The position numbers and the translations under genes are program-made. A model generated the notes under the pieces. The model was not told where the DNA came from, made no database searches, and worked only from the letters and a program-made list of their open reading frames with translations. Of a stretch of 46,178 bases of DNA, positions 651-36,059 are shown piece by piece (within the stretch, counting starts at the first letter, position 1; every line of letters begins with the position of its first letter). The DNA is from Macrostomum lignano. Its lineage: Eukaryota. The stretch lies in the NCBI GenBank assembly GCA_002269645.1, contig NIVC01004431.1, positions 1-46,178 on the forward strand. Direction: 5' to 3'.

Positions 651-753
651 AAATCACGGACTACTTAATTGTCGTTTATACTTAAGTAGTCCGTGAATCA
701 AATCTTATCAAATGTCAATTTAATCTAATCTAATTGAACCTCATCTCATTCAG

Positions 754-3722: not shown

Positions 3723-3733
3723 AGCACCAGACT

Positions 3734-4014
3734 GAGATTCCATCCAGTGAGATCCCATCCAGTGATATCCCATCCAGTGAGATCCCATCCAGTGAGATCC
3801 CATCCAGTGAGATCCCATCCAGTGAAATCCCATCCAGTGAAATCCCATCCAGTGAAATCCCATCCAGTGAAATCCTATCCAGTGAGATCCGATCCGGTGA
3901 GATCTCATCCAGTGAGATCCCATCCAGTGAAATCCCATCCAGTGAAATCCTATCCAGTGAGATCCGATCCGGTGAGATCTCATCCAGTGAGATCCCATCC
4001 AGTGAAATCCCATC
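3734..4014. repeat. 15-bp minisatellite (GAGATCCCATCCAGT)n
   Basis: About 19 tandem units starting just after the gene A stop codon; explains the MGFHW/RSHPV repeat ORFs. Confidence 0.95.
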
Positions 4015-6717: not shown

Positions 6718-9655
6718 CTAAGAAAATCTGCATTCAATGAGTATACACTTCACCAAAAAATTCTGGCGGGGCACGGGCCCTCTCACTTCGGCGCAATACA
6801 GGCTGTTCTGGATGCTCTGGAACATCAGCAGGGGCGCCGACCGGGGCGCCGATTGGGGTGCCGGCTGGGGCGCCGACCGGGGCGCCGACTGGGGCGCCGG
6901 CTGGGTCGCCGGCTGGGGCGCCGGCTGGGTCGCCGGCTGGGCGCCGGCTGGGTCGCCGGCTTGGGCGCCGGCTGGGGCGCCGGCTGGGGCGCCGACCGGG
7001 GCGCCGACTGGGGCGCCGGCTGGGGCGCCGGCTGGGGCGCCGGCTGGGGCGCCGGATGGGGCGCCGGCTGGGACGCCGTCAAATCTCAGGTCGTCCTCGT
7101 CAGGATTGTGCTGTTGCGCCGCTGGTTGCAATTGAGGTGCTGCAGCTGGACTGGCCGTGTTGCATGGCTTCAGGCGATTGAAATGCACCACCCTTCGCCG
7201 TCGTGCATTGGCCTCGTGCTGAATGCGGTAGGTGACGTCTGAGATCTGCTTTTTAACGCGCCATGGCCCAGTCCACCATCGATGAAATTTTCGGCTCTCG
7301 CCTCGCTTCAGCGCCGGATTGTGCAGCCAGACCAGATCGTTCTCGCTGAATGCCTCGCCGTGGCACCTCCTGTCGTACGCTGCCTTCTGGTGCAGTTGCG
7401 CTGCCTCCAAGTTTTGTCGCGCCCTCTCGTGCGATGTCTGCAGCCGGCTCCGCAGCTCGGCCACCCATTCACAAGGACGTTGCCTATCCGGCGCCAGACC
7501 TCCGTATGCCAAGTCCAGTGGTAGTCGCAGTTCCCGGCCGAAATGCATCGCCGAAGGTGTCTGACCAGTCGACTTGTGGACTGAAGTGCGGTAGCCCATC
7601 AGTGCAATCTGCAGATGAAGATCCCAGTCTCGCTGATTCTCGTTCACCCATGCTCGCAGCAGCTGCACCAGTGTCCGGTTCATCCGTTCGCAACCGCCGT
7701 CTCCTTCAGGGTGGTAGCCTGTCGTCCGAGTCTTGTCGATTTTCAGCAGCCGCATCGTCTCTTGAAACAGCTGTGACTCCCAGTTCCGACCCTGGTCGGT
7801 GTGCACCGACTGCGGGACTCCAAAGCGAGCCACCCACTCGTTGACAAACGTCCGGGCTGTGGTCTCAGCGTCTTGAGACGGCAGTGGAAAGGCCTCAGTC
7901 CACTTGCTGAAGGTGTCGATGACTACCAGGATGACTGAATTTCCACGATCGGTCCTCGGCAGGCCCACCATGAAGTCCATTTCCAGTCGCTGGCCAACGC
8001 TGCCGACCGCCATGCTCTGTAGAGGTGCCCGCCTGTGCTGGCCAGAATCTTTCAGTGTCGCGCATTCGAGGCACGCAGCACACCAGTCAGTCACATCTGC
8101 TGTCATTCCAGGCCAGTAGAGTCGCGCCCTGATCTTTTCTATGGTCTTCTGCGGTCCGCAGTGGCTGCCGCTCGTTCCAGCATGAGCTTCGACAAAAACA
8201 TCGCGCTGTAGACTCTCTGGCACCAGCAGCTGCTGACAAAAGGCGCTGCCATCTTCGGATTCCCATCGGCGGCACAGCAGTCCGTTCACCAGTGTCAGCC
8301 GCTTAAACTCGGACAGCAGTTGCCGCTGCCGATTGCTCCAGCCGTCCGTCTCTGCCTTATCCGGTGGTTGCCCATCTCGCAAGCAGTTCGCCAGCTTCTG
8401 CATGCACCGATCCTCTGCCTGTGCTCGTCGAATCGCGCTGTCGTCATTGAACTCGACAGCGAGCGCAGAGCCACTGCACAGGCAAGGTCCTTTTCGACAC
8501 GGTCGCCGACTAAGTGCGTCTGCATTTCCATGTTTCTCGCCCTTGCGATACTCCGTCTGGTAGTCGAATTCGCTTAGCTTATCCAGCCACCGTGCCAGCT
8601 GACCATCGGGATCTCGAAAGCGCAGAAGATGGATCAGCGAGGCGTGATCAGTACGTAGTGTGAATCTTTTTCCTAACAAGTAGCTGCGATAGTGACCGAC
8701 GAAGTGCACAATTGCCAGCAGCTCACGCCTCGTTGTGCAGTAATTTCTCTCTGCTTTGGACAGAATGCGACTGCCGTACGCCACCACCTGCGTCCTGCCA
8801 CCACGGCGCTCTTGAAGAACTCCGGAGATGGCCACGCCAGAGGCATCGGTATCCAGCACGAACTCAGCGTCTTCTGCGAATGTCGGCATGATGAGGACTG
8901 GGCTGGAAGTAAGGCACTGCTTTAGGCGATTAAATGCTGCTGAGCATTCGAGAGTCCAGCTGAAGGTCACGTCCTTTTGCGTTAGCTTGTACAGCGGTTC
9001 AGCAATCTCACTGTAGTTTTTAACGAAATGACGATAGTAGCCACATAACCCCAGGAATTGTCGCACTTCTGAACGATCTTCGGGCGTTGGCCACTCCTGC
9101 ACTGCTTTCACCTTGTCCGGGTCAGTGGTCACGCCATCTTTTGAGATTCGAAAGCCAAGAAATGAGATCTCCTGATAGCACAAGTGGCACTTGGTCGGCT
9201 TCAACTTCAGGTTAGCGGTTCTGAATTTCTGCAACACAAGCTCAAGACGCCGCAGATGCTCCTCGAATCCTTTCGAAAAGATGACAACGTCGTCAAGAAA
9301 TGACAGGCACACTTCCCATCGGAGGCCCTTCAGAACGAGTTCCATCAGCCTTGAAAACGTGGCAGGACCATTGCACACACCTTGCGGTAGTCTCTTGTAC
9401 TGGAATAATCCTTGTGGCGCAGGAAATGCTGTTTTTGCGCGACTCTCTGAGTCCAGCATCACCTGGGTGTACCCGCTAGTGAAGTCGAGCGTTGAGAACA
9501 TTGTGGATCCTGCGAGAGCATCGATCAGATCGCTGGTGTGAGGCAGTGGATGACTGTCTTTGACGGTCACGGAGTTGAGCAGTCTGAAGTCGTTCACGAA
9601 GCGCAAACTGCCGTCCTTCTTCTTCACCAGAATGACCGGGCTCGACCACGGAGAA
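6718..9655 (-). CDS. pol: Gypsy pol: reverse transcriptase, RNase H, integrase
   Basis: LRFVNDFRLLN, LPQG, FLDD, FLGLCGYYR, DTDASG, HHCC zinc finger, D-D-E core and GPW motif. Joined to the protease ORF across a +1 indel at about 9656. Confidence 0.95.
6830..7078 (-). repeat. 12-bp GC-rich tandem repeat (GGGGCGCCGGCT)n inside the pol C-terminus
   Basis: About 20 imperfect units; translated as (AGAP)n then (PAPQ)n in the pol ORF. Confidence 0.9.
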
Positions 9656-10732
9656 TTTCGAAGGCTCTACGATGTCGTCTCTCACCATCTGCTCGACCAT
9701 CTCTGACACAGCTCGCTGGTTCGGCGGCGACAATCTACGAGGAGGCACTCTGATAGGTTTCGCCGACCCGGTGTCAATTTTGTGGTCAAGGAGTGAAGTG
9801 CAGCCCAGGTCGTTTGGACTTTTCGAGAACACATCCTGGTACTGATGCAGAAGATCTTTGACACACTGAACTTGATTGGCTGTAAGATTTTTCTCATCAA
9901 TGTGCACATTTGGTACATGCTCGGCGATTTGACCTTTCACTGTCTCAACTTGCATTGACAACTCTGCATCGGCACCATCTGACATCGGCTCAAAAGTCCC
10001 CAGTCTTGTTCCGGGGTAAAATGTATGCGGCTTGGTGTCCGTATTGACATAGTGAACAGCGATGAGTCCTCCTCGCAACACCGAGAGGCTGCGCGCTCCA
10101 CACATGACCGTGGAGATGTCCTTCGAATTGTCAGGCTCAAAAATGCCGCACTCACCATCAACAGCTGCATCTGACTCACTTGCCAATCTCGCTGGGAAGA
10201 CGATTTCGTGACCAGCGGGCACGGTTGTCCTGTCTGCTACCTCAACGGCGAATACACAGCTACTTGCTGCCGATGACTCCATTTTTACTTGCTGACCGCA
10301 CACAGTGAGCGTTTGGCGATTGCAGTCGATGACGCAGCCACAGTTTGCCAGGAAATCTGCACCCAGCAAAAAATCCTTGGCCAGATTGTCGACAACTAAA
10401 ACTCTTTGTCGAACCGTTGCCACACCGAAACTTAGCTGCACTTCCTGCCAACCACAGGCAGCCAAATAGTTACCGTCTGCCAGCTTCAACTGCACCGGAG
10501 TCGTCAAAGGCAGGAGCCTCTCATTCAGCTTGCGAAACAGGGAACTTGACATCAAAGACTGGGAACACCCAGTGTCAACTAGACAGCTGGCAGGGACACA
10601 CATTGGCAGGATGCGACAGTTTACCAGCATGTTGGCACCAGTGGCTGAGCAGGACACCTCTACGACTGGTTGCGCCGGGATTCTCACTTGCGGAACGGCA
10701 CCCCGGCGGTCGCCGCTCCATCGAAGTTTCCC
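9656..10732 (-). CDS. Gypsy aspartic protease and start of RT (in the -1 frame relative to gag)
   Basis: LVDTGCSQS active site, FLLGADFL, YQDVFSKSPNDLG, HKIDTGSAKPI...MVRDDIVEPS RT leader. Confidence 0.92.
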
Positions 10733-11526
10733 GACTTCTGAGTGCAAAATTTTTGAACATGGCCCGGCTTACCGCACTTCCAGCATGTCACAACTCTGCG
10801 TCTGTCGCCGCTCTGACGATGATCCTGGTCCTTTGACTCCCAGCGGCTAAGCTTGTTGGACAGCTCCTTCAGGGACCGTTGAATTCCGACTGCAAAGGCT
10901 TCGGGAACCTCAGCAGCTAGAGCCGTAGCAGTGCCTCCTTGCGACTGTATCGATTCCACGAATCGCGCTGTTTCAACTGTATCAGCGAATGTCGCCTTTG
11001 CCTGCATCTGCGTCTGCATTCGCACAGCTGGGTCCCTCAATCCGGATAGAAACCGACCTTTGAGAAGCTCGTCCTTCGCTGTCACCGACGTCTCCTGCTC
11101 GGCACTTGCTTTCGTGTCCATCAGACTCGAGAACGCACGCTTTGCCGCAACGATCAGGGCATCGGAATAATCTGCAACCGACTGACCGTCCTTTTGAGTC
11201 AGATTGAAGAACTGCGCCTGCAGCTCAGCAGAGGATGTTGATGGCCGAAATCGATTTTTCAGAGCCTTCTCAAAGTCGTCGTAGGACAGGGCAGCATCCA
11301 AATTGCTGGCCGCTTGATATGATTTGTCGTCGAGGAATGACAGCAGAGCATTCTTGCGCTGATCCACAGGAAGAGATGATGCGAAATTGTTGAATCGTGC
11401 CAGCCAAAGTTCAAAGTCTTGTCCATGCTGGTATTGAGGCGGCCGCAAAAACATGTTGACAAAACTAGCTTGGGGCTGAGTCACCGCCACTGTAGGGCTC
11501 TCTGCACTGCCTTCATTTTCAGTCAT
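10684..11526 (-). CDS. gag: Gypsy gag with C-terminal CCHC zinc knuckle
   Basis: ATG at 11526 immediately after the PBS; CWKCGKPGHVQKFC knuckle; WLARFNNF and DELLKGRFLSGLRD are gag-like. Confidence 0.9.
   Translation of the reverse strand: MTENEGSAESPTVAVTQPQASFVNMFLRPPQYQHGQDFELWLARFNNFASSLPVDQRKNALLSFLDDKSYQAASNLDAALSYDDFEKALKNRFRPSTSSAELQAQFFNLTQKDGQSVADYSDALIVAAKRAFSSLMDTKASAEQETSVTAKDELLKGRFLSGLRDPAVRMQTQMQAKATFADTVETARFVESIQSQGGTATALAAEVPEAFAVGIQRSLKELSNKLSRWESKDQDHRQSGDRRRVVTCWKCGKPGHVQKFCTQKSGNFDGAATAGVPFRK
10692..10732 (-). promoter_or_regulatory. Candidate -1 programmed ribosomal frameshift signal (gag-pol)
   Basis: G GGA AAC in the gag frame (10732-10726), 6-nt spacer, then 8-bp stem GGAGCGGC/GCCGTTCC with a 12-nt loop; pol continues in the -1 frame. 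Confidence 0.75.
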
Positions 11527-11531
11527 AGCCG

Positions 11532-11543
11532 CCGCTGCCACCA
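11532..11543 (-). promoter_or_regulatory. Primer binding site, tRNA-Leu-like
   Basis: TGGTGGCAGCGG lies 1 nt inside the 5' LTR and is complementary to ...CCGCTGCCACCA, the 3' end of metazoan tRNA-Leu(AAG/TAG). Confidence 0.75.
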
Positions 11544-11544
11544 A

Positions 11545-13252: not shown

Positions 13253-16200
13253 ATGTCCGAGAGGAGCAACGAAGCATCTGACGGCAGCGTCCGTCGCAGC
13301 TACCTGAATGAGTTCTGCAACTACACCACCGCCCACGGACTGGGCAGATTCGGGGCCCAGGCCAGCAACTTCGGCAGAACCCTGTGGCTCTGCTTCCTGC
13401 TGGGCACCTACGGCGGGTTCACCTACCACATGTACACCCTGGGCCTGCAGTTCGCCAGCGTGCCGCTCTCCACCAGCCTGTCCACCTCGCTGCCGTTCGA
13501 GTTTCCCGACGTGTACTTCTGTCCCACAGACACTGTGACCATGAGCCGAGCCAGTCCTCAGGTGGACATCTTTTCCCTGACCCGGCAGATCACCTGCGAC
13601 TCCGACTGCAAGCGACAGATGAAGTTCGACGTTTTCAGATCGGACGCCGTTCAGTACGGCGTGCCCGCCGTGGAGCTGCTGGATGCGATCACGGCTGTGG
13701 AAGAGAATGTGACTGATGCACTGCATTATGACAACACCTGTAAGTGTGCATTGAGTAGATAACAGAAGTGCACTCTTTGCCTTTCGGAAGGCCTGGAAGG
13801 AGGTCTTCATCGGCAGCGGCAGTGCTGAAGCCCAAATCATGCACATGAAATAAGATATAATGAAAATATGAAGTAAGAAATAATGGACACGAGGATTCCT
13901 GAACCATAGACAACTAAACTCGAAGGACGCAACACTCGAAAATACGAGGTAGTTCAGGGGGGTGTTTCTCGAAACTCACGTAAGTTCTATGGTAAGTTAG
14001 ATCGTAAGAAAGAAATTTACGTGTAGCGTAAGTTTGCTCGTAAGACGCTTTCTCAAAACTCACTTAGACTTTGCGTGGCTTACGCTGTTCGTAAGTCGTA
14101 TCTGAAACGAAAAGTTGCATGTCTATGGTCTTAAATCTGCAAATATCTTTACTTAGTCTGTCGTAAGTTGCTTCCGAGAAAGACCCACCTTCGATAAAGT
14201 TTAACTTGACTTGGCTTGACTAAAGCTTCACGTACTATGCGATTAGTGCTTAAGTGCGTCTTACGACTGATACCGAGCAGTCGTAGGGTTAAGATCAACC
14301 TTACGAAAGACCATAGACATACGAACGTTTTGAGAAACAGTCTTTTGCGCAAAGTTACGAACTCGTAAAGTTGCGATCAATCTTACGCATAGCTAACTTG
14401 CGAGCCTTTCGAGCAACCCGTTAGTGTAGCTTACCCAACTTACGTCTATGGTCGATCGTAAGTTGCTTTCGAGAAAGACCCCCCAGATTTCGCTGGAGAC
14501 TGGTTTTCGCTGCAACTTCGATGTCGAAGTTTTCAGTCTTAGACTTTCAGATTGCAAATGAAGCCAGTGTTGTAGTTTCCGCTACCGTCCGTGCGGACCG
14601 CAGACGGGGTGGTCGGGGTTCGGGTACTGCATGGACTGTCTAGAGCCTGCCGAGTGTGATAGGAGAGGACCCCTAGGCGCACAAACACTGCGGGGCGTAA
14701 GTGGATGGGCCGGGAGCGTACTGACACTCCTACAATCCTGCAAGAGGGAGGTGAGAGCCGGGCAAGGGCCGTGCGCGCGCATAAACACTGCAGCACTCAG
14801 TGAGAGCGGGGGCTGGGTGGGGCTTAGCCACGCGGGCTAAGGGGGGGGGGCAAAACTCACCGAGTTGAAGGGCAAAAGAGAGAGAGGGGAAGCCAATCCA
14901 GAGACATGATTGGACTGGCCCAACGAGAGAGGAACTGAAAGGGGCAGCCAATTTAAATACAAACTACGAGACATCTTAAACGAAAACAAGAATGGCAACT
15001 TCAGACAGAGGCAGTCTAGAATGAGCCAGCGGCAGAGAGAGGAGAGGCGGAGAGCGAAAGGGTCGGGCTATAAGGGCATTGTAAAGCGCAGCTGACAACA
15101 CAAGTTTGAGTTTCATTTGAGACACGTTCGTTGCTGTTTCATCCTGCCATCTTGGACAACTTCAGAGATTTGCAGACTGCCTGAAAAATCATTTTTCAAA
15201 AAACTTCCGACTGGTAATTTTCGTCCAGGCTTGTCCCGAACAGTCGGGGCAAGCATCAGGAGTATTTAGTAGTCCCTGAGTGCGGGTTTCTGTGTCGGTA
15301 CACGGGGTTTACGTCAGAACTCGGGACGGGACCTAGTCCGAGCCCTGGCGGTCTTTATTTTATCAAATTCGACCCCTCTTCCGTTGCAGTGCCTTTGAAC
15401 GTGTGCCGAAAAACTCCGGGTGGAGAAGAGTACCGCGGCAACCTGTCCCGGGTGCCCGTGTTTAATGCTTCCATCATTGTTGCAAAAATAAAAATGTACT
15501 TTCTGTTTTTTTATTATACACGTTTCCAGTGGAAAGACCAGCCGCCCCATGTGAGCTACAGCGACTGCATCGGCTGGAATGAGGCCGCCAGGGAGCTGCA
15601 GGCGGCCGGACTGCGCCAGCTGGCTGGAAGAATCTTCGCCGCTGGCTTCGCCGACAGCCACCGCAGCTGCAGGCAGCCAACCGGCCTGCCGCTCACCGCC
15701 TTCGACGACAATGCGACGCGTGAGTGGCAAGAGATGGCATTTTAAAAGTTCTACTTGTATCACGGATATGATAATAAATAGATTGGTGCGTAGTTCATTT
15801 GAAGCATTTTAATGTTCTTTCGGACATGACGGTGCTCCTGAACAGACATAGAGCAACTCAGGCTCACAAAATGCAGGCCAACTTTTTCCTGCGCACCTTC
15901 TCAAAGAAGAATCAAGACGCCAGCCCTTCGGAACGTCGAGATATTCAACGATTCACCCAGACACTTGGATTTTTCCATAAGTGCCAGTGCGTATCTCACT
16001 GCTGGGTATCCTCAACAAAGTTCACAAGAACTTCAGTCATCCCCCAAAGCTGTCGGCGTTTCAGCAGATGACACCAGGTGACAAAGTTCGAGTATCCGAG
16101 TATTAGGCTAACTCGTTGAATATCTCGACGGTCCGAAGGGCTGGCGACTTGATTCTTGCTTAGGAAGGTGCGCAGCAAAATTTTGACGTGTCCTCGAATT

Positions 16201-19200
16201 TCGTGCGTCTTAGTTCCGTGCGGCGCAGCAATAAAAAGGGCAATTCCTTCTTTGAATGAAAACTCACATTCCTACCTCCCAGCTTAACCCCTCCAATCCC
16301 AGCCTCACCGCCCAATCTTCATTGTCTGCTTCGGTGTTCCAGCCTCAAGCCTCTTTGCATATTTTTAGTTGTGCTGTCTGACGTACTCATAAATTACGTA
16401 CAGCTTCACTAATATATTTTAGTCTCGCTAAGATATTTACCGGTACGTCTCGTCAACAATAGCTGACGCATTATTCCTTGCTACTGAACTGAAAGCGGAT
16501 TTCTGCAACCGGGTGTTCAAATGCAGGTCCGCTGCAAACTTACGTCGGTTGCTTGCCCGCAAGCGACGCAGAAGGCACAGGGCTGCGGCAGCACAAGTGC
16601 CTGAGCGGCTTCATGTTTGACCAGCTCCGGCTCGGCCTGTGCGCAGAGTGCTGCTACAACGCTGCCTACAGCTACATGAGCCTGCTGGCTGGCGACACCT
16701 GCTACTGCGGCAACGAGCTGCCTGGCAACGATAGCCTCAAGCAGAAGAACTCTGCGTGCGGAGTTCGCTGCCCAGGAGATGCTAAGGAGATCTGCGGAGG
16801 CGAGAGAGCGCTCAGCGTCTATCTGGTGCGGAGTCTGGGTGAGCGTCACGAGTGCGTTTGTGCAATCCAGTTGTCAGTGCGCAAAATGAACACGACCTTC
16901 CATCGATTAAAATTGTGTCACTCTTTTCAAGACATTTTAAGTTGGAGATTAAGCAGTCCTGCTAAGCTTTCCTGAATCATTTCATATTCTGTATGTGCGT
17001 GGCATTATGGCTCATTTGCTAAGGCTGAGCTGCAGTTTGCCCTGCCGTCTGTGATGTTAGCTGTCACACCTTAGCACCTTACAACGGCGTATCTAGTCCT
17101 ACAGAAGACACTTGCGCAATGCACCCAATGCACATGTAATAGTTAATTACAATACGAGCGTTGTTTTTTAATGCATTCGATGCTCTGGCATGCGCAGGCA
17201 TTGATTAACTTTACTATTTCGATTTCTCACCTGCAGACCCCAAGCCTCTGTTCATCCCGTTCAGCCCCGCATTAGACAGCCTCAGAGTCGGGCCCTACTG
17301 CTTCTACAGAGCCGCTGGGGGCCGCCTGGGTGCCACCTACTGCAATGTGCCTTACTGCCGTGAGCACCGCTGTTTTTACCTGGGAATTTGTTAATTTTTC
17401 AGTCATTACAGTTACAACTTCTTAGTATATAAAATTAGCAATACAATTACGAGCAATAAGTTTTCAGCAGTTTTTGTAAAACTGCTAATTAATTAAACTT
17501 TGTAATTACAAAAATTTTCAACAATTTTTGTAATCGACTCAACAGTCCTTATATTAATAGCATAGGCACACAACCGGCGAGAGGCATTACTGCCCATTCC
17601 GCCGACTCCACTGAGCAGGCAAACAAGCGCGTGGCTACGTACGCAGGCACACACTCACACAGGAGTGTAAATGGACCCTAACTTTATTTATCGTTAGGCA
17701 CGTAAACTTCCCTGAGCCTTGGGGGTTGTTCATTAAGGGCGTTAATTGCACGAGCAGAGCTAAGCCGAGAATTCAATTTAGCCTCGTCGTAGTCGTAGAC
17801 GTCGTAGTGTGACTGTACCTGGAATCGATACCGAGCCACTGATACATCAGAGCGCCCCACTAGACCACTAGGCTGTGCCCCCACCCATATTGATGATCGA
17901 TTCGACCTTTAGCCCTTGACCAAATACTTGCCAGGCCTCAAAGCTTTGATACTCTGGCCTTATACAAGAAACTACAAGTGACCAAAAGCTACTTTTTCTA
18001 GTTTACCTGTTGAGCGCCAATAGTTTTGGTCATATCAAGCAGATATTTCTTAGCGTTGAAGGAGCGACTACTCTGAGCTACTTAAGTCCTTTGTTGCAAT
18101 CCGACAGCTAGCTACAAAAGGTCAAAAATTAAAACTAATTCAACAATTGCAGCAAGACGGCATTGTTTTAACTTCATGACTTGTTTTCCGCATTCCCACA
18201 GCCATTTCCTCATCCTTCGACTGTCTATCCAGCAGCAACGATGGCTCCATCAGTGATTCGCAGTACCTACGCTACACCGGCCACAGATCCAAGACCAAGA
18301 CTCGCGACAACTGCCTCAACTGGTCTGATTTAGAAACCACATTTTTAGGCCAGTGGAATTCTTTCAAATTAAGTTTCAGATTGCTTTCCTACGATGTGAG
18401 AATGAGTAAGTTTTTATTGCAAGACGTGTTCAGAAAAAATAATTAGAGTGCTACTGACAGTGCGCACTAGAAATGTATAAGTGACTTTAGAAAAACTCTG
18501 CACCACTGGAGGTTTTCTGCAAGAAACCACCGGAAAAAACAGCCTCATCTACAAAAACACAAAAACCAACAACCACCACAATCAGTGCTGGGCGCCGCCG
18601 AAGCAGGTCACTTGGGTCAGGTCAGCGTGACGGTTGAGTGCGGCGTTGCTGACTCAATCGTCAACTTATTAGCGTTTCAAAGCTGAGATAATAACACTTT
18701 ACAAGCGGTACACAGATATGCACCCAGCGGGTCAGGAGTATTTCAATCTATTTCAGTTACTCTCCAACTCAACTAAACTCAATGGACAGAAATTTTATTA
18801 TACAGCAAAGCCACAAAAACTTTACAACTTTCGCAGTTGAAATAAAAAAAATGTACGTTGAGACTCCGGACTACAGCTTGTACACGAACAAGACGGGAAA
18901 CTTCTGCCGGGCTGCCAGGGTGGTTATTGATGCCTTCGTCTATAAGACCGGCAGATCTGATGGGTACTACTTTATGTGAGTATTGACGGGCGTTCTTGGA
19001 GTATCGCGATTGTCAGTAGAGGTTCCCAGTCCAGACTCAACTGTCGTTTTGAGCACACAGAATCCAGATATGAAGGTCTAGAACTAGAAATTCGAACAGG
19101 AAGCAGAGCTCTGTCACCAGCAATTTTCTTTACAACATTTAAGGCCATTAAATGTTCCTTAAGTAAGACCTTGCCCGAGTAAGTCTAAAGAGACAAAATT

Positions 19201-22200
19201 GCGAATCTGCTAGCTTAGATTAGTTGAATTTTCCACACTCCATACCAATAATAATAATAAATTGAATCCGCGTTAATGGGCAGATGTGCAACCAACAGCT
19301 CAGCCGCAGCTATTGCCGGCGAATCTGAAGGCTGCATGCGGCTGTTGAGTCCAAAGACTGGAGGGTCGCCACACACACCCTTAGTTACCCCAGCTGTTGG
19401 CTACCATTTTACAGCTGGGTGAACTGAAGCAATACAAAGTTAAATTTCCTGCTCAATGACACCAATTATTTCGAATCTGTAGAGAATCGATCTCCCGACC
19501 GTTCAGTCGTGAAACCGACGCTTTAACCACTAGGCTAGGACGCCCCTATTACATTCAATACATTTCTTAATGTTATACCAATATTTAATAGCTTTACGTG
19601 TCTTTTTTGTTTCATTGGATGCACGAGCCTTCATTTTTTAAAAATTGCGAAAGTCACAAGTTCCCCACACACCCAGCCGTCACCAGATTGTCAAATCCGA
19701 TACTCCTGTCTGCTTCGTCATGATCAACCAGAGAAGTGCGATCCTGGGCGCCTGCAGAGTGGACGCCTGCTGTGAGTGGTTTTATTGATTTAATTTGCTA
19801 GAAAGGCGGGATTCCATTCAAGGTTGATCGATACAAGTCTTTTCAAGCCAAGTCAAGGTCGTTACAAGCCTTTAAACCTTCATGAATTTAGTGAGTATTC
19901 AGTTAAGGCGCTGGGCACTGCCGCTAATCAAGGAGACAGCCAGAGTGAACGCAAGCAGTCATGTCCATACCGCAGACCCCTGAGCATGCACACGCTCACA
20001 CAGGGTGCACAGCAGCCCTGCTTGTCTAATCGTCAGGCGGTAGAACATTCTGTGCCCTGGGGTTGGCACACGGAATCAAATCTGGGTACTCTGGCGCGAG
20101 AGTCAGACACGGTAGCCGCCGAACTACTGAGCCCCAAAGCTCATGGCTAGGTTCAAAGCCTTATTCAATTTCGTGATTGATTCGAACTGATCCTGAGACG
20201 CTGCCGCAACCAAAATCTCTTACGCCAGCCCGAGTGACGCAGAGCATCCCCGGCCTGGTGCGGGACCAGGTGGGCAACGCCCTGCTGGCCAGCCGGTTCG
20301 GCAGCAGCATCGGCATCGGCTTCACTGGCTGCTCTTTCGGCAACCAGGCCTGTACAATGGAGGACTTCACCACCCTGCTGCACCCGGAGCTCGGACTGTG
20401 CCACCGGTTCAACCAGGAAAAGTTCGTCGGGCTCACCAAAGATCTCAAGGCCACGGAATCGTTGCTGTCTTTTAATTACTTCACCGACTCTACAGACTCC
20501 AAGGGCCGGCGGCTGCCCGGTCTGAGCCGGATGGCCAAAGTGATTTTTCCCGGACTGGTCGACGCGAATGACGACACGCTGAGCGCCATGAAGGCAAGAA
20601 CTTTGTCCCAAAACTTGCGGCAAACTTGCGTAAGCCGCTTAAATAGTACTGCCTGAATAGAGATATAAAAATATTGTAAGAGCCGAGAATTTAGAGTCAA
20701 CTCACGAAGTATATTTGGCATGCACGATAACTGGGGAGCGATTATAATAGTCCGCGATAGAAAGGTTATAAAAGGACTCACCCAACTGGGGTGGTGGCAT
20801 GCACAGAGTAAAGCGAGATGCAAGTGTTGTAACCCGGGTCGGTTTGGGTGCCCAGTCCCGAGTACAATATATATTATACGTAAGATACAGGCGTAGTGAC
20901 GCTCTGTCTGTACTTTTATGGATACGAGCAGGCGTGCGACGCTCTGCGATAATAGTTCGATCCCTCTGGTGTTGTGACACTCAGAGTTCACGCTGCGGCT
21001 CGGGGTGTGGTGACACTCTCGAGTGCTTCTAGTCTCAATACTGTAGGTTGTACACACTATATAGAGTAGACGGTACAATACTACAAAAAGCTATATGATC
21101 TCCCGGCGTTATGACGCTCTGGCAAGAACTCGGCCTAACAAGCTCCCAGAAAAGAACGAACTCAAGCAGCAGGCGGCTTACCAGTGGCCAAATCGCCGTT
21201 ACGTTTATTGATTCGCTCGTGCAGGTTCTAACTTCCAAGATTCTTCTCAAGGCTCTTCTGTTTCTTTTCTCGTATTCAATAGCTAGAATTGCTGTTTAAC
21301 GGTCTAGTCTCGCACTTGTACTCTCCGAGCACACCAATTCAAAACACAAAACAGCACGAACAGAACAAACAGAACAAACAGAGCAAACAGAGCAAACAGA
21401 GAAAACCGAGCGAAGGGCGTGAGCAAGGCCCAGAGCCGCATTAAATAATAATCAAACCCTGGGGCAGATGGCCCCACCGGCTAAGCCCAACCAAACAAGC
21501 TACCCCAACAAAATAGAGACTGACCGCGCCGGCCAGCCAATCAAAACCCCGCCTAGGGGGGAGGGGCCGCACCCGCGCCAAAGCTGGCCCGGCCGCAGCC
21601 AACCAGCCCTGAGCACGGGGCAGGGGCACGGCTGGGGAGGGGCACGCGCAAAGCCCGGCCGGCGGCCAGACCCTGCCACGCCCGCCAACCCCCCCCCCCC
21701 AACCAGACCCAAAGTGCAACGCGCCCTGCCAACTGACAGAGCAGCCCCCACCCCAACTCCACAAATCAAACGCAACCTCACAATATTAACGAACTAGACT
21801 AGAAATGGTGGGCAGGGCGCTCATGACTCAGAAAATGGAGTATAGAGCGAGAAAAAACGTTTCCGCAATAGCAAGTAACTACAACAGGGGCTTATGGTTT
21901 GTTCCAGACCAGTTACTTCCAATTGAAATGAATAATGGCAGCCCGAAACCCTCCAGGTGATTCTGGTTCCTAAGGGCCAGTTTCCCTGGCGAGAAAACGC
22001 CATCACCGCCAGCCCGGGCCAGCACCTGCAGCTGAACATTCGCTTCGACAAGCTGAACAGGTATTCGAAGCCTCCAACGCAGGAGTGCCGTCCGCCCGCG
22101 GGGCCCACAGTCTACCGGATTCCCTCGTGGCGCACCAGCTGGAACTACTCAAGTCCTGAGTTGTGAGCTTGAATTTTCTGTTTAGCATTGCACAGCCTTT

Positions 22201-23357
22201 GAACTGACAAGCAGAGCAAAAACGTCTTGAATTAAAATCTCCAGAGATTCATTCAATATGACGACTACAATTTCCTCACTGAACTGGTCAGCAAAGCTCC
22301 AGACTTTACGAGGCCGGCTGAGGACTGTAAATAGCAGCATGTAAGTTCCTCTCTTGCAGGGCATTGCTGCTCTCAGCTTTCGCTTTGCCCTTTTCTGCTT
22401 AAACTTATTCCATTGCGACTTGCAGCAGTCCGATGAGCGAAAACTTGACATTCGAGATGCAAGATCAGCGCGACTGCGTCAACCTGTATGCGGTGAAGAA
22501 GTTCATCGAACACTGCGGCTGTCTGCCCTCGTTTCTTCCTGTTCCGGTGCAGCTCTTCCAGAACTACACCTACTGCTTCAACCAGACAGACATGGAGAGC
22601 ATCAAGAGGATGGAGAAGTGTTACACAGAGCGAATGAGCTCAATATCGCGTTACGAAATGGAAGCCCGCCAGGTCTGCCTAACGATGTGCAACACTCGCT
22701 TCTACACTTTCCGACCCATCACCTACCCGTGGCCCGGCCTGACCATCGAGACAGCGGTGGACTTCATGCAGAACAGCCAAGGGGACTGGTCCTACCCCTA
22801 CAACTTCCTGTTCTCCAAAGGCATCGCGAATCTGTTCTACCTGGACATCCGGAGTAGCGAAATGTACAACCGCTCAACGATGCTCTCGGCCTCTGAGCTG
22901 CTCGATTTTAGAAACAAGCTGGAAGTTTTGCAGGAGAGCCTGGTCAAGGTGTCAATCAAGCCGGTCAGCGACTTCGGACAGGAGATGACGGAAGAGCCTT
23001 CTTACACCATCAAGAATCTGCTGGCCGACCTTGGCGGTGAGCATTTCAAAGCTACCGTGTTATGCTGTCATTTGCAGTTCCGAACAATGGCTAATATGTA
23101 AGCATTTTTTAGGCGCTCTCGGTCTCTGGTCCGGCATCTCAGTTCTCACCGCGTGTGAGCTGATTGAGCTGCTGGTCTACCTGGTGGCAGCGACTCGACG
23201 TACAGAGCAGCCCACCCAGCCGTCAGGGCCTGCGACTGGCAACGCTGAGCAGCAAGACAGCGGCGAGATGAAAGCTGACGACTCAGCCACTGAGGTTGAA
23301 ATGACAGACAAAATGACAGACATTGCAGCACCTGAGGTCTCCATCTCGGTTCCTTGA
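13253..23357 (+). CDS. DEG/ENaC channel paralogue B with a kringle[WSC]-kringle extracellular insert; 11 exons, 1038 aa
   Basis: Exons 13253-13739, 15390-15719, 16527-16838, 17237-17359, 18202-18405, 18837-18975, 19677-19771, 20229-20593, 21957-22162, 22426-23036 and 23113-23357 join in frame (3117 nt). Motifs: EFCNYTTAHG (HG), TM1, FPDVYFC, GCSFGNQAC...GLCHRFN, thumb cysteines, [16 protein letters not shown] (TM2). Confidence 0.9.
13958..14483. mobile_element. MITE, PIF/Harbinger-like, in intron 1 of gene B
   Basis: Terminal inverted repeats GGGGGT(G/C)TTTCTCGAAA, 3-bp direct repeat CAG on both sides, many internal CGTAAG/CTTACG motifs, no coding capacity. Confidence 0.7.
15390..15719 (+). 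CDS. Gene B exon 2: N-terminal half of kringle 1
   Basis: C...GEEYRG..S...CIGW...SCRQP matches kringle C1-YRG-C2W-C3RNP; phase 1-1 exon. Confidence 0.75.
16527..16838 (+). CDS. Gene B exon 3: WSC domain
   Basis: YVGC...CAECCYNAAYSYMSL...CYCGN...CGVRCPGDAKEICGG..ALSVY; phase 1-1 exon. Confidence 0.9.
17237..17359 (+). CDS. Gene B exon 4: C-terminal half of kringle 1
   Basis: DPKPLFIPFSPALDSLRVGPYCFYRAAGGRLGATYCNVPYC matches kringle PWC...YCxVPxC; not in the supplied ORF track. Confidence 0.8.
17561..17882 (-). mobile_element. SINE family A copy (intron 4 of gene B)
   Basis: Aligns by eye with 12239-12595 over most of its length. Confidence 0.8.
18202..19771 (+). CDS. Gene B exons 5-7: kringle 2
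   Basis: FDC...YTGHRSKTKTRDNCLNW (18202-18405), GNFCR (18837-18975), PVCFV...GACRVDAC (19677-19771): six cysteines in kringle spacing. Confidence 0.75.
19250..19545 (-). mobile_element. SINE family B copy (intron 6 of gene B)
   Basis: Reverse complement of 5551-5860 with (TTA)n tail. Confidence 0.78.
19955..20145 (-). mobile_element. Degenerate SINE, family A-related
   Basis: Shares CCCTGAGCA..CACAC.CTCACACAGG.TG.ACAGC.GCCCT and a tRNA-like head; more diverged than other copies. Confidence 0.45.
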
Positions 23358-26110: not shown

Positions 26111-26239
26111 TCGATGATCTGTTAAAGATGCAGCCGGAGCTTGATACTGTCTCATTGCGACACAGCCTGCAGTAGTTGCCTGAATATCCATCACCAGTAG
26201 CTTCTGAGCCTCTATATGGTATACTTCGATCTTTATCTA

Positions 26240-33300: not shown

Positions 33301-36059
33301 CGAACGGCTCGGCAGTGGTTGTAGGGCACCGGGCTGCAGTCTCTCATTTGGTAGTCTGGTGTCTCTACGTCCAGACTCACCACTCGAGCTAAACTCGAAG
33401 CGGAGGGCATAAAAATGAATTCAATGGAATTCGAAATTGAATGCTAAAAAACTCGTCTACTGTCAGGTGAGTTTCTTACCTACTCTATTCGCAGAGTATC
33501 TGATGTCCCAGGTGTAGTTCAAATTCCCGGAAAGCACAAGCACCCTGAAGCTGCGCCAGTCCATGCAGCCTTCGCCGCTTTCCGTAAAGTTCACGAAGCC
33601 GGAGTACCTCGCTATTTGAAGGTCGTCTGCTTGAGAAGCATCATTTGTCCGCAGACAGTCGTTGTCATGCGACATTTCTGAAGCCCAAAATTGTTTTATT
33701 GGATTTTGAGGGGCTGCTCTGTTTAGAGTACACAATATTTGAATGCACTCGTGTCCTCACGGCAGTAGGGTATGTTGCAGTAGGACGCAGACAGACTGTT
33801 TCTGGCGTCCCTAAAAAAGCAGTACGGCCCATTGCTCAGGCCTGCCAGGTTGGGCCTGAACGGCAGTACGAAACCCGGAACGCTGCCTGAGTGAAAAAAG
33901 AGTGAACGTCAAGCTGAGGAATTCTCCACTTATCCTCGGTACTACTCATGGCTTACCAAGAGCAATGACTCTGTACACAGACAAGTAGGCTTCGCTTCCA
34001 TCGCCTCCGCCACAGATCTGGTTGAGATGTCCCGGACACTTTTCAGTGCAAGAATTGTCCGCGTTGGTATCGAGGTAATCTTTCCGGTCAGAAACTATTC
34101 GATCGGAGCAATAGCAAGCGAACCGATGCACCCCGGCGTAAGGAAACTGCTTGTTGTAGCAGCACTGCCGGCACATGGTCACCGTCATGACATTGAACTT
34201 GGTCTCAATGCAAGTTTCATTCTCCTGCCAGGCCCTCAGTCCAATGCAACCGACGAACTCCGATACCGGATCTGCCATTTTTACGACTGTGGTGTCATGA
34301 CAAAGCTGAAAGCTTGAATAGCCATACTGTGACCAAACAACTCACAGGTAAAATTTTGCTTTAGAGCCGTCAACGGCAGATTGGGAGGCTGCCTGCAGCT
34401 GCGGTCGGTGTCAGCGAAGCCTGCACTGAAAACTCTGCCAGCCAGCTGGTCCAGGCCCGCAGCTTGCAGCTCCCTAGCGGCCTCGTTCCAGCCGATGCAG
34501 CTGGTGAGTGTCACATGGGGTTTGGCTGGCGCAGTCGTGAGGGCGACATTCCTGAATTCTACAAAGAGACTTTCGTAGACGGGGACCACGGAGAGGCTGC
34601 CTGTGTATTCTTCGCCAGCCGCTGTGACACGACAGGTGTCGCTAGAAGCTGGAGAGAGGCGTGTCGGCGCGAGAATATTTTTATGGCGAGTTTTGAGAAT
34701 CAAAACAGAAACAGGCATAGGGTCGAAAATTTGGTTTGTTGAAACTATCTTATGAGCTTTTATGGTAAAATAGACTTATTTTATGCTCTCCCTAAATGGG
34801 ATGTCAAATTAAGCACCGGAATGCAGTCTAAAGTAAAGCGGAACAAAACCAACTGGAATCAAACTGGCTGGCATGTCATGTCTAGTTCGGAGCTTTGCTT
34901 GTAAGTCCATTGTGTTGCTTAATTAACCCGGCATTCCTTTCGATGCCTGCCTGCACTGTTTAAAGCAAGCGGCCCCGTGTCGTCATTCGGCCGCGCACCG
35001 ATACTAAAATTATGCGTCCGATGCTGTAAACATAAACGCTGTTTACAGCATCGGAAAACAAAGCATCATGGAGTTTATGAGTATCAACTGAAACCATTTT
35101 CTGCTCTGGTTCTGGATGTTAGGTTGATTCACTAGCTCACATTTTTGTTCAAGAGTCTTGACTGCCTTTCTGCTCTCGACATGTGAATGGAATATTAACA
35201 TTGATTCCTTTGTGAATTTGTGATCCTTCTACAAAGTAGGATACACTGCCACTCAAATGATTGATTGCTAGGATGGAAAGTAAAATTGATTCTTTGGATA
35301 ATTGGATCAGTTTCTCGACCTTTTAGACTATAGTTTTGTTTTATTACTACAAGCCCGTCAGGCACTCGTCACACCAAACATACCCTTCAGTTGACGACCA
35401 ATACTGGCACGAGAAATTCTAAGTCTAGATGACCTTCCAACGCGCTCTTATTGAGGTTTACCTCCTTGAAATTACGAGCTTAGACTGGGAAAATGTGTCT
35501 AAGAAAACATAAATGCAGCTTAGTCCAGTTGATTTTCATTCAATTCAAACGTCAATAGAATTTTCTCACTTGTATTGCCATATTGCAGCTCGTTCAGGAC
35601 GGCCTCCTCTGCTGAGATGACAGTATTGAGCAGAGCCTCTGTGCTAGCACTGTAGCTGACTTTAGAATTGATCTCGAACAGTAATTTTCTCAGAACGCAC
35701 TCGCTGCTGCAAAGACTGTTTCTTAATATTTCGTTGGTGTCAATTGGTGCGGCCAGCCGGCTCATGGTCACGGTGTCTGTTGGACAGATGTACACGTCGG
35801 GAAACTCGAACGGCAGCGAGGTGGATAGGCTGGTGGAGAGCGGCACGCTGGCGAAATGCAGGCCCAGGGTGTATATGTGGTAGGTGAAGCCGCCGTAGGT
35901 GCCCAGCAGGAAGCAGAGCCACAGGGTTTTGCCGAAGGTGCTGGCCTGGGCCCCGAATCTGCCCAGTCCGTGGGCGGTTGTGTAGTTGCAGAACTGCGTC
36001 AAGGAGCTGCGGACTCCGTCGCTGGACTGGGAAGATTTCTCCAAGCCCGATTTCTCCAT
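27382..36059 (-). CDS. DEG/ENaC channel paralogue C with the same kringle[WSC]-kringle insert; two apparent lesions (possible pseudogene or assembly errors)
   Basis: Exons 36059-35570, 34648-34346, 34271-33957 (WSC), 33886-33761, 33677-33480, about 32707-32562 (uncertain), 31750-31662, 30814-30453, 30185-29977, 28659-28031 and 27556-27382. Intron positions and phases match gene B. 1-nt deletion in TM2 at 27534-27537 and in-frame TAA at 32591-32589. Confidence 0.85.
28899..29160. mobile_element. Fold-back/MITE-like inverted repeat (103-bp arms, 56-bp loop)
   Basis: 28899-29001 is the reverse complement of 29058-29160 with one mismatch; explains the mirror ORFs at 28927 and 29132. No TSD seen. 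Confidence 0.85.
29583..29943 (+). mobile_element. SINE family A, full length
   Basis: A/B-box head, poly(A) tail, imperfect direct repeat GATGACTGAGAGCA / GATGATCGAGAGCA. Confidence 0.85.
30975..31083. repeat. GA-rich low-complexity microsatellite
   Basis: Degenerate (GAGAG/GA)n tract. Confidence 0.8.
31885..32215 (+). mobile_element. LINE 3' fragment, second copy
   Basis: ENAEHFICECPVFTQDRLTYFGPN then [19 protein letters not shown]; same family as 1460-1790. Confidence 0.65.
32229..32545 (-). mobile_element. SINE family A copy, 5' truncated
   Basis: Body and tail match 12239-12595; stops at the B-box region. Confidence 0.75.
32747..33268. repeat. 25-bp minisatellite (CATGTAAGAGTACACTCCCGACTCA)n
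   Basis: About 21 near-identical tandem units in intron 5 of gene C; no unique spacers. Confidence 0.95.

What the first reader, a model, noticed from the sequence alone, without database searches (positions are those of the whole stretch)
15390..17359. WSC domain nested inside kringle 1 (domain-within-domain)
Kringle 1 cysteines C1-C3 (CRKT..GEEYRG; CIGW; SCRQP) are in exon 2 and C4-C6 (GPYCF; YCNVPYC) are in exon 4, with the whole WSC exon between them. Gene C shows the same order. With canonical kringle disulfides (1-6, 2-4, 3-5) the WSC domain would be displayed from the kringle loop. Kremen has the two domains in series, not nested. Profile searches may miss the split kringle, which could explain why it was overlooked.
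Basis: partly seen in the sequence, partly recalled or inferred. Interest (0 to 1): 0.8.

Follow-up and report, generated by a model that had tools for sequence, protein, structure and literature searches.

The report
WSC domain inside a split kringle
In a family of sodium-channel genes of the flatworm Macrostomum lignano, a WSC domain encoded by one in-frame exon sits inside a loop of a strongly diverged kringle domain, a domain-within-domain layout that standard domain searches miss and that I found described nowhere.

Summary
The layout is real. The window is Macrostomum lignano DNA. The gene at 13253-23357 (+) is a DEG/ENaC-type channel. Exon 2 carries three cysteines, exon 3 (16529-16840, 312 nt, phase 1-1) is a complete WSC domain, and exon 4 (123 nt, phase 1-1) carries three more. 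The paralog on the minus strand and five further M. lignano paralogs have the same order, and all six flanking cysteines are invariant.

Is the host a kringle? Pfam's Kringle model gives no hit. The AlphaFold model of the exon 2+4 fusion is confident and compact but has four helices and no significant Foldseek match (best hit a kringle, E=1). However, a profile of the fusions aligns end to end with 17 true kringles (hhalign 96.4%, P=1.3e-9). All six cysteines are in register, and the WSC falls in the C3-C4 loop. 200 column shuffles reached a score of at most 22.7, against 54.1 observed.

So the WSC is nested in a kringle-derived but heavily remodelled domain. Disulfide pairing could not be checked. 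The whole cassette (split kringle with WSC, then a second kringle-like domain) is itself inserted in the channel's extracellular finger region. It was found only in M. lignano. I rate it a new variant of a known kind, of moderate interest.

The parts
13253..13739 (+). Exon 1 of the host gene: N-terminus, TM1 and the start of the DEG/ENaC extracellular domain. It ends ...ACC T|gtaagt (phase 1).
   Evidence: Pfam ASC PF00858, profile positions 1-84, E 7.4e-12. Exon end read. tblastn of P0003 and P0004.
15390..15457 (+). Exon 2a: start of kringle 1, with C1 and the G-EEYRG motif (PLNVCRKTPGGEEYRGNLSRVP).
   Evidence: Aligns to kringle positions 1-17 in hhalign and to the N-end of each of the 7 kringles of P0012.
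15458..15529 (+). 72-nt in-frame AT-rich mini-intron within exon 2 (GT...AG, no stop codon). It lies in the C1-C2 loop.
   Evidence: Spliced in model P0003 (SRVP|WKDQ) and retained in P0002. The paralogs have 15-17 coding residues here, starting V[FY] like the retained version.
15531..15720 (+). Exon 2b (its first base is 15530): kringle 1 C2 (CIGW), a predicted helical hairpin (WNEAARELQAAGLRQLAGRIF), C3 (SCRQP) and the linker TGLPLTAFDDNAT. It ends in phase 1.
   Evidence: C2 and C3 are in register with kringle CQxW and CRNP. Helices 38-47 and 51-59 have pLDDT of about 90.
16529..16840 (+). Exon 3: a complete WSC domain (104 aa, 10 Cys) on one symmetrical phase 1-1 exon of 312 nt. This is the inserted domain.
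   Evidence: Pfam WSC 6e-13, profile positions 1-82 of 82. PDB sequence hits to yeast Wsc1 at 7.7e-6 and to Kremen1. Foldseek matches Kremen1 at 4.8e-6 and Wsc1 at 2e-5 with TMt 0.70.
17237..17359 (+). Exon 4: C-terminal third of kringle 1 (DPKPLFIPFSPALDSLRVGPYC4FYRAAGGRLGATYC5NVPYC6). 123 nt, phase 1-1.
   Evidence: hhalign to kringles. Top PDB sequence hit is the neurotrypsin kringle. Beta-hairpin at residues 210-214 and 220-224 in the model.
18202..19771 (+). Exons 5-7 (18202-18405, 18837-18975, 19677-19771): a second kringle-like domain (K2). It has a 54-residue C2-C3 stretch and a 35-residue C3-C4 loop. Intron phases are 1, 2, 1.
   Evidence: The K2 N-half aligns to kringles at hhalign 83.7%. 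Pfam Kringle gives sub-threshold hits in the paralogs, and UniProt names fragment P0018 'Kringle domain-containing'. K1 and K2 are collinear from C2 to C6.
20229..23357 (+). Remaining exons of the DEG/ENaC channel: about 20229-20611, about 21957-22150, a small exon near 22250-22340, about 22425-23036, and 23113-23357 with the stop codon. They include the CxFxxxxC...GxCxxFN motif and TM2.
   Evidence: tblastn with paralog P0004. Pfam ASC profile positions 296-455, E 1.8e-19. Splice sites of the last intron read.
33761..34648 (-). Gene C (a paralog spanning 36002-27427 on the minus strand), same nested cassette: exon 2 at 34648-34346 (C1-C3, no mini-intron), WSC exon at 34271-33957, exon 4 at 33886-33761 (C4-C6). 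All are phase 1-1.
   Evidence: Pfam WSC 4e-9 and no Kringle hit. 61% identical to the focus gene over the flanks.

Best explanation
The gene encodes a subunit of a DEG/ENaC-type (amiloride-sensitive-channel family) cation channel of Macrostomum lignano. Its variable extracellular 'finger' region carries a cassette of about 380 residues rich in disulfide-forming cysteines. The first unit of the cassette is a kringle-derived domain whose chain is interrupted between its third and fourth cysteines by a complete WSC domain. Exon 2 gives C1-C3, exon 3 gives the WSC, and exon 4 gives C4-C6. The two flanks come together into one compact domain, presumably stapled by the three kringle disulfides (inferred). 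The WSC therefore projects from the C3-C4 loop. A second, uninterrupted kringle-like domain follows.

The host kringle is strongly remodelled. It has a long C1-C2 loop and a helical hairpin between C2 and C3, so only its two ends and its cysteine framework still look like a kringle.

The arrangement most likely arose by exon shuffling. Either a symmetrical phase 1-1 WSC exon was inserted into a phase-1 intron of a kringle, or half-kringles were lost from a KR-WSC-KR array. It then spread by gene duplication within the lineage. This origin is inferred.

The function is also inferred and untested. The cassette may act as an extracellular ligand-, glycan- or matrix-binding appendage on the finger domain, and so could couple binding or tethering to channel gating.
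For: Gene identity. The hits are M. lignano proteins at 95-100% identity. Pfam ASC matches exon 1 and the 3' exons. The closest PDB relatives are FaNaC, ASIC and ENaC.

Position of the cassette. It lies between the post-TM1 'FPDVYxCP' strand and the CxFxxxxC..GxCxxFN motif.

WSC domain. Pfam gives 3e-12 to 6e-13 over the full profile length. Foldseek matches Kremen1 and Wsc1.

Conservation. An exhaustive HMMER search of 1.84 billion representative proteins with the fusion profile found five further divergent paralogs (33-48% identity). Each was hit as two stretches flanking a WSC. All six flank cysteines are invariant in the 7 paralogs. Exon boundaries and phases are identical in three paralogs.

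Kringle homology.
- The fusion alignment against 17 kringles gives hhalign 96.4%, P 1.3e-9, over template positions 1-81 of 81, with all six Cys in register. Against the 7 P0012 kringles alone it gives 97.1%, P 5.6e-11. 200 column-shuffled controls reached a score of at most 22.7, against 54.1 observed.
- The K1 profile hits the N-end and the C-end of each of the 7 Pfam-verified kringles of P0012 in strict alternation.
- A 10-kringle HMM gives three collinear fragments in every paralog, and 0 of 300 shuffles reach the real score.
- The top PDB sequence hit is the neurotrypsin kringle.
- The neighbouring K2 is kringle-like and collinear with K1.

One domain from two flanks. AlphaFold gives the deltaWSC fusion pLDDT 82.8 and pTM 0.79. 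The secondary structure of the flanks is the same with and without the WSC. Three cysteines on each side is an odd number, so cross-links between the flanks are needed. The first and last strands of the WSC fold are neighbours in Kremen1, which suits insertion into a loop.
Against: Pfam Kringle PF00051 gives no hit on K1 in the focus gene or in any paralog, even at E<=10. Against vertebrate kringles alone, only the last 22 residues align (hhalign 60-76%). The full-length alignment depends on the kringles of P0012, and P0012 was itself selected by this profile out of the whole library. The nominal P value therefore overstates the significance. I estimate that a correction for about 1e5 kringles would still leave about 1e-4.

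The confident model of the fusion has four helices, whereas kringles are 'low in secondary structure'. It has no significant Foldseek match; the best is a kringle at E=1.0, TMt 0.22. In the full-module model the C1 region (residues 1-16) and C6 have pLDDT below 50, so the C1-C6 link is not predicted with confidence. No coordinates were available, so disulfide pairing is untested. The alignment has only 7 sequences, all from one species. The proposed function has no direct evidence.
Confidence: 0.7

Rival explanations
1. The WSC is nested, but the host is effectively a new fold. In this reading only short kringle-like motifs survive at the two ends: C-x-T-x-G-x-EY-x-G at the start, and GPYCF...YCNVPxC at the end. 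The body of the domain, a beta-hairpin plus a helical hairpin, is a lineage-specific invention, so calling it a kringle would be misleading.
For: There is no Pfam Kringle hit. The AlphaFold fusion model is confident yet has four helices and no significant PDB neighbour. Vertebrate kringles align only over the last 22 residues. The cysteine spacings are non-canonical.
Against: hhalign aligns end to end with all six Cys in register at 96-97% probability, far above column-shuffled controls. In P0012 both the N-end and C-end motifs map to the two ends of the same kringle unit, 7 times out of 7. 'CIxW' aligns with 'CQxW' and 'CRxP' with 'CRNP' in the middle of the domain.
Confidence: 0.2
2. The arrangement is serial, not nested. 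A C-terminally truncated kringle remnant (exon 2), a WSC domain, and an N-terminally truncated kringle remnant (exon 4) would behave as three consecutive units. Their odd cysteines would pair with WSC, K2 or channel cysteines, or between subunits.
For: In the full-module model the regions around C1 and C6 have low confidence. Foldseek aligns the whole module sequentially to the serial KR-WSC of Kremen1, though with rmsd 16 A. Each of the three exons is an independent 1-1 module.
Against: The deltaWSC fusion is predicted as one compact domain with pTM 0.79. A half-kringle has no independent fold, and its three cysteines need partners. All six cysteines are invariant across the paralogs, whereas the WSC cysteines are not: P0008 has lost some. 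The WSC has an even number of cysteines (10), so none is left over.
Confidence: 0.07
3. The layout is an annotation or assembly artefact, or the gene is a pseudogene. In this reading the WSC exon belongs to another transcript, or the locus is dead, so the nested protein is never made.
For: No single public protein model covers exons 2-3-4 of this exact gene copy; P0003 stops after exon 2 and P0001 starts inside exon 3. Some older M. lignano models are clearly chimeric or unspliced.
Against: Strand, order, splice sites and phases are the same in three genomic paralogs. Five full or long paralog models join the three parts. The reading frames are open throughout. The cysteines are conserved at 33-48% overall identity, which indicates purifying selection.
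Confidence: 0.03

Closest known systems
Kremen1/Kremen2 ectodomain (Kringle-WSC-CUB)
   Same: It is the only well-known protein that combines a kringle and a WSC domain in one rigid extracellular unit. Foldseek puts Kremen1 at the top for the full module (4.8e-6). The canonical kringle disulfides and the WSC fold are defined there (PMC5014086).
   Different: In Kremen the domains are in series (KR, then WSC, then CUB) on a single-pass receptor. Here the WSC lies inside the kringle's C3-C4 loop, there is no CUB, a second kringle-like domain follows, and the carrier is an ion channel. Sequence similarity to the Kremen WSC is weak (E 0.2). The Foldseek match is driven by the WSC alone (rmsd 16 A overall).
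Canonical kringle domains (plasminogen, HGF, neurotrypsin; the 7-kringle GPCR P0012 from a TARA Oceans scaffold)
   Same: The framework of six cysteines is in register. The shared motifs are G-x-EY-x-G, C-x-x-W, C-R-x-P and GP(W/Y)C...YC-x-(I/V)P-x-C.
   Different: It is below all Pfam thresholds. It is 126-143 residues long without the WSC, against about 80 for a kringle. C1-C2 is 30-47 residues instead of 21. A helical hairpin replaces the proline-rich C2-C3 loops. The C3-C4 loop is about 140 residues because of the inserted domain. There is no significant Foldseek match.
Finger-domain elaborations of DEG/ENaC channels (ENaC GRIP domain, extra cysteine-rich domains of C. elegans degenerins; from my own knowledge of the family)
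   Same: It is a lineage-specific insertion in the variable region between the first palm strand and the conserved CxFxxxxC..GxCxxFN motif of the extracellular domain.
   Different: The insert here is built from mobile extracellular modules (kringle, WSC) bounded by phase-1 introns. It is not a family-specific elaboration. My literature searches found no DEG/ENaC channel with WSC or kringle domains.
Yeast Wsc1 cell-wall stress sensor domain
   Same: It is the best sequence and structure match for the inserted domain alone (7pz2: phmmer 7.7e-6; Foldseek TMt 0.70, rmsd 3 A).
   Different: Wsc1 carries the WSC at the N-terminus of a single-pass sensor. Here the WSC is an internal insert with 10 cysteines rather than 8, in an animal channel.

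Membership tests
Kringle (PF00051) | Score above the Pfam gathering threshold (34.3 bits) | tested here: not met
   The exon 2+4 fusion gives no hit even at E<=10, with or without the mini-intron. There is also no hit on K1 in gene C or in any of four paralogs.
Kringle (PF00051) | Six cysteines and the flanking motifs in kringle order and register (profile-profile homology) | tested here: met
   hhalign of 7 fusions against 17 kringles gives 96.4%, P 1.3e-9, template positions 1-81 of 81, with C1-C6 aligned. 200 column shuffles reached a score of at most 22.7, against 54.1 observed. Caveat: the result depends on the kringles of P0012, which this same profile selected. Against vertebrate kringles alone only the C-terminal 22 residues align.
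Kringle (PF00051) | Compact fold of about 80 residues, low in secondary structure, superposable on solved kringles | tested here: not met
   The AlphaFold fusion model (pLDDT 82.8) has four helices and two hairpins. The best Foldseek hit is the neurotrypsin kringle, but at E=1.0, TM 0.15/0.22, rmsd 5.6 A over 56 columns.
Kringle (PF00051) | Disulfides C1-C6, C2-C4, C3-C5 | not testable with these tools
   Model coordinates are not returned. Only indirect support exists: three cysteines on each side, all invariant, and one compact domain predicted.
WSC (PF01822) | Full-length match above the Pfam gathering threshold (27.8 bits) | tested here: met
   46.9-49.3 bits, profile positions 1-82 of 82. 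Gene C scores 37 bits. Paralogs P0004 and P0017 score 39-41 bits.
WSC (PF01822) | WSC/PAN-like fold | tested here: met
   Foldseek matches Wsc1 (7pz2) at E 2e-5, TMt 0.70, rmsd 3.1 A, and Kremen1 at 4.8e-6.
DEG/ENaC channels (ASC, PF00858) | ASC profile match covering the TM1 side and the TM2 side of the protein | tested here: met
   In the focus gene, exon 1 matches profile positions 1-84 (7.4e-12) and the 3' exons match positions 296-455 (1.8e-19). Paralogs score 1e-26 to 1e-51. PDB relatives are FaNaC, ASIC5 and ENaC.
DEG/ENaC channels (ASC, PF00858) | Forms a functional trimeric cation channel | not testable with these tools
   This needs heterologous expression and electrophysiology.
Kremen family | Serial KR-WSC-CUB ectodomain on a single-pass membrane protein | tested here: not met
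   There is no Pfam CUB hit. The order is KR(N)-WSC-KR(C)-KR2, and the carrier is a two-TM channel. It is not a Kremen.

The most novel reading that the evidence does not exclude
The nested cassette would be a functional gating appendage. The kringle scaffold would hold a WSC domain out from the finger of a DEG/ENaC channel, so that binding of a glycan or matrix ligand, or mechanical pull through it, opens or modulates the channel. Because exons 2, 3 and 4 are all symmetrical (phase 1-1), the worm could switch between WSC-bearing and WSC-less kringle isoforms by exon skipping. That would be a new way to couple an extracellular sensor domain to this channel family.
Probability: 0.12. Interest if true: 0.7.

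Novelty: new variant of a known kind. Interest (0 to 1): 0.5.

Why it matters
Kringles are small, triple-disulfide modules that usually behave as indivisible beads on a string. A whole 100-residue domain tolerated inside the C3-C4 loop, and kept through many gene duplications, shows that this loop is a permissive display site. The second kringle-like domain has a 35-residue expansion in the same loop. The case is also a clean genomic example of a domain-within-domain architecture built from symmetrical phase 1-1 exons.

It documents a blind spot of routine annotation as well: all family members are labelled only 'WSC domain-containing' or 'amiloride-sensitive channel'.

For channel biology, it defines a lineage-specific DEG/ENaC subfamily of at least 7 paralog lineages in M. 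lignano, three of them in this window. These channels carry putative carbohydrate- and protein-binding modules on the finger domain, the region that controls gating in ASIC and ENaC. M. lignano is a tractable model flatworm, so this gives testable candidates for ligand- or matrix-coupled channels.

Tried and rejected
- Pfam scan of the exon 2+4 fusion, spliced and unspliced versions: no Kringle hit.
- phmmer and hmmsearch of the fusion profiles against PDB sequences: only marginal hits. The neurotrypsin kringle came first at E 0.5-0.75. Talin and ribosomal eL8 hits at similar E-values are noise.
The full-length match appeared only after I added the seven Pfam-verified kringles of P0012.
- Foldseek of both AlphaFold models: the full module matches only through the WSC. 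The fusion has no significant neighbour.
- Library hits P0010 and P0011 from the exhaustive search are repeat-summed artefacts, one a low-complexity repeat and one a 4900-aa T/G/S-rich repeat protein. I discarded them.
- I tested whether the WSC exon sits in an intron homologous to the C3-C4 intron of K2. The K2 intron is phase 2 and at a different distance from C4, so this gives no support.
- I looked for an uninterrupted (WSC-less) paralog or an exon-3-skipped product. None is present among the 11 library hits, and all long hits have two stretches. The public protein sets do not even contain a full-length model of this gene copy, so skipping cannot be judged.
- Literature searches for kringle + WSC + ENaC, degenerin + WSC, kringle + domain insertion, and Macrostomum + amiloride-sensitive found nothing describing this architecture.
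I solved this by aligning the full paralog modules to the fused window sequence.

Full report
What the window is. The 46-kb window is eukaryotic DNA. The translated region of the finding matches Macrostomum lignano (free-living flatworm) proteins at 95-100% identity. All relatives found later are also from this species. The window holds three paralogous DEG/ENaC-type channel genes:
- a 3' fragment at about 748-3602 (+);
- the focus gene at 13253-23357 (+);
- 'gene C' at 36002-27427 (-).
In the focus gene, exon 1 matches the Pfam ASC profile at positions 1-84 (7.4e-12) and the 3' exons match positions 296-455 (1.8e-19). The closest solved relatives of the family are FaNaC, ASIC5 and ENaC.

Checking the observation.
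- Exon 2 runs 15390-15720.
- Exon 3 runs 16529-16840 (312 nt, phase 1-1).
- Exon 4 runs 17237-17359 (123 nt, phase 1-1).
All have canonical AG/GT sites. Public gene models use the 1/2, 3/4 and 4/5 junctions of this gene (P0003, P0001). Five paralog models use the 2/3 junction. Exon 2 encodes three cysteines (CRKT..GEEYRG, CIGW, SCRQP). Exon 3 is a complete WSC domain (Pfam 3e-12 to 6e-13, profile positions 1-82 of 82). Exon 4 encodes three cysteines (GPYCF, YCNVPYC). Gene C has the same three exons in the same phases (34648-34346, 34271-33957, 33886-33761) and a WSC hit of 4e-9. One correction: exon 2 holds a 72-nt in-frame mini-intron (15458-15529) that is spliced in one public model and retained in another.

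How widespread it is. I built a profile from the exon 2+4 fusions of the two window genes and searched 1.84 billion representative proteins exhaustively. There were eleven hits at E<=0.001.
- Five are long M. lignano DEG/ENaC paralogs (P0004-P0008). Each was hit as two stretches that flank a WSC domain.
- Three are fragments of the window genes.
- Two are repeat artefacts.
- One (P0012, E 2e-5) is a protein with seven Pfam-verified kringles and a rhodopsin-type GPCR domain, from a TARA Oceans scaffold.
Across the seven paralog lineages (33-48% identity to the focus gene) all six flank cysteines are invariant, while some WSC cysteines are lost in P0008. In the genomic locus of P0004 the three exons have the same boundaries and phases. 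No WSC-less relative and no relative outside M. lignano was found.

Is the host domain a kringle? The evidence is mixed and I give both sides.

Evidence against a kringle:
- Pfam's Kringle model gives nothing on this domain in any family member.
- PDB sequence searches give only marginal hits, although the neurotrypsin kringle is first.
- Against ten vertebrate kringles, hhalign aligns only the last 22 residues (69-76%).
- AlphaFold2 predicts the deltaWSC fusion as a confident compact domain (pLDDT 82.8, pTM 0.79). That domain has two beta-hairpins and four helices, whereas kringles are poor in secondary structure (PMC5014086).
- Foldseek finds no significant PDB neighbour. The best is again the neurotrypsin kringle, at E=1.0 and TM 0.15-0.22.

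Evidence for a kringle:
- A small kringle HMM run without filters gives three collinear fragments in every paralog (G-EY-G, C-x-x-W, GPYC..C-x-x-P-x-C). Scores are 10.5-16.4 bits, and none of 300 shuffles per sequence reaches the real score.
- The K1 profile hits the N-end and the C-end of each of P0012's seven kringles in strict alternation.
- Against 17 kringles (P0012's seven plus the ten vertebrate ones), hhalign gives 96.4%, P 1.3e-9. The alignment covers the whole kringle with C1-C6 in register, and a single large gap between 'CRxP' and 'GPYC' marks where the WSC sits.
- Against P0012's kringles alone the figure is 97.1%. 200 column-shuffled controls gave a mean score of 11.0 (SD 2.3, maximum 22.7), against 54.1 observed.
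- The next domain in the protein (K2, exons 5-7) is independently kringle-like (hhalign 83.7% for its N-half; sub-threshold Pfam hits; one fragment is named 'Kringle domain-containing' by UniProt). It is collinear with K1 from C2 to C6.

Because P0012 was picked by the same profile, the nominal P value is optimistic. I estimate that a correction for 1e5 kringles would still leave it significant. My reading is that K1 descends from a kringle and keeps its cysteine framework and both ends. Its interior has been rebuilt: the C1-C2 loop is 30-47 residues, and a helical hairpin (WNEAARELQAAGL.QLAGR) lies between C2 and C3.

Is the WSC truly nested? Several points support it.
- The full module model (pLDDT 73.5, pTM 0.66) and the fusion model give the flanks the same secondary structure.
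- The fusion is predicted as one domain.
- Each flank has an odd number of invariant cysteines, while the WSC has ten.
- In the WSC fold the first and last strands are neighbours, so its termini can leave and re-enter a loop.
The pairing itself was not shown, because coordinates are not returned. In the full model the residues around C1 and C6 have pLDDT below 50.

Larger context. Exons 2, 3, 4 and 5 and the block of exons 5-7 all begin and end in phase 1, so the whole cassette (exons 2-7) is bounded by phase-1 introns. This is the classical signature of shuffled extracellular modules (established knowledge, after Patthy). The cassette lies between the post-TM1 strand and the conserved CxFxxxxC..GxCxxFN motif. 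That is the variable finger region of the channel's extracellular domain. The architecture is therefore doubly nested: a WSC inside a kringle-derived domain, inside a DEG/ENaC extracellular domain.

Mechanism.
- Shown: the gene structure, its conservation, the WSC identity, and the kringle-register homology of the flanks.
- Inferred: the flanks are stapled by the three kringle disulfides and display the WSC from the C3-C4 loop. The arrangement arose either by insertion of a 1-1 WSC exon into a kringle intron or by loss of half-kringles from a KR-WSC-KR array. The cassette serves as a ligand-, glycan- or matrix-binding appendage that can influence gating through the finger domain.
- Not tested: the function.

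Comparison with known systems. Kremen1/2 is the closest known kringle+WSC unit, but there the domains are serial and followed by CUB on a single-pass receptor, so this protein is not a Kremen. It is a member of the WSC and ASC families by their Pfam criteria. For the kringle family it meets the cysteine-register criterion, but it fails the Pfam threshold and the fold-similarity test. Literature searches found no description of a domain inserted in a kringle, or of a DEG/ENaC channel with WSC or kringle modules.

Verdict. I classify it as a new variant of known kinds. It is of moderate interest for protein-module evolution and as a lead for flatworm channel biology.

Noticed in passing
window 15458-15529: There is a 72-nt AT-rich in-frame mini-intron with no stop codon inside exon 2. 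It is spliced in public model P0003 and retained in P0002. The paralogs have 15-17 coding residues at this spot, and the retained version starts 'VFNAS', like the paralogs' 'V[FY]...'. This looks like intronisation of former coding sequence (an exitron-like element).
   Followed up: partly
window 18202-19771 (exons 5-7): The second kringle-like domain (K2) has a 35-residue expansion in the same C3-C4 loop that holds the WSC in K1, and a 54-residue C2-C3 stretch. Its internal intron before C4 is phase 2, so it is not obviously homologous to the introns flanking the WSC.
   Followed up: partly
window 748-3602 (+), 13253-23357 (+), 36002-27427 (-): Three paralogous DEG/ENaC genes lie within 36 kb. 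One is cut by the window edge and one is in inverted orientation. This is a local gene-family expansion.
   Followed up: partly
window 6718-11544 (-): There is a retrotransposon with intact long ORFs. One gag-like ORF of 286 aa has a CCHC knuckle. A 423-aa ORF contains a protease-like region. A 969-aa ORF has reverse-transcriptase and integrase motifs. It looks like a Ty3/Gypsy-type element. It lies between the first two channel genes and has a GGGGCGCCGGCT minisatellite (6831-7078) in its 3' coding end.
   Followed up: no
window 172-655, 3733-4014, 26229-27000, 32743-33270, 40033-40232, 41246-41727, 43559-44288, 45022-45549: The window has many minisatellites, with periods of 5-52 nt and 8-97 copies. 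One (32743-33270) lies inside gene C.
   Followed up: no
window 39353-44635 (-): This GC-rich stretch (about 60% GC, against about 48% elsewhere) has long ORFs encoding Ala/Leu-rich, helical-repeat-like protein segments. It appears to be a different gene, and I did not identify it.
   Followed up: no
L002 (TARA_SAMEA2620871 scaffold_7346) 501-3755: An intronless ORF encodes seven kringles fused to a rhodopsin-family 7TM receptor (Pfam Kringle 7e-99, 7tm_1 1.5e-18). This is an unusual kringle-GPCR from an unidentified marine eukaryote. Its kringles are the closest canonical relatives of K1.
   Followed up: partly
protein clusters of P0003, P0004, P0007: UniProt names for fragments of these genes ('Peptidase_M16_M', 'Mab-21', 'GON domain-containing') suggest that older M. 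lignano gene models are chimeric or fragmented. Database architectures for this family should not be trusted without the genome.
   Followed up: no
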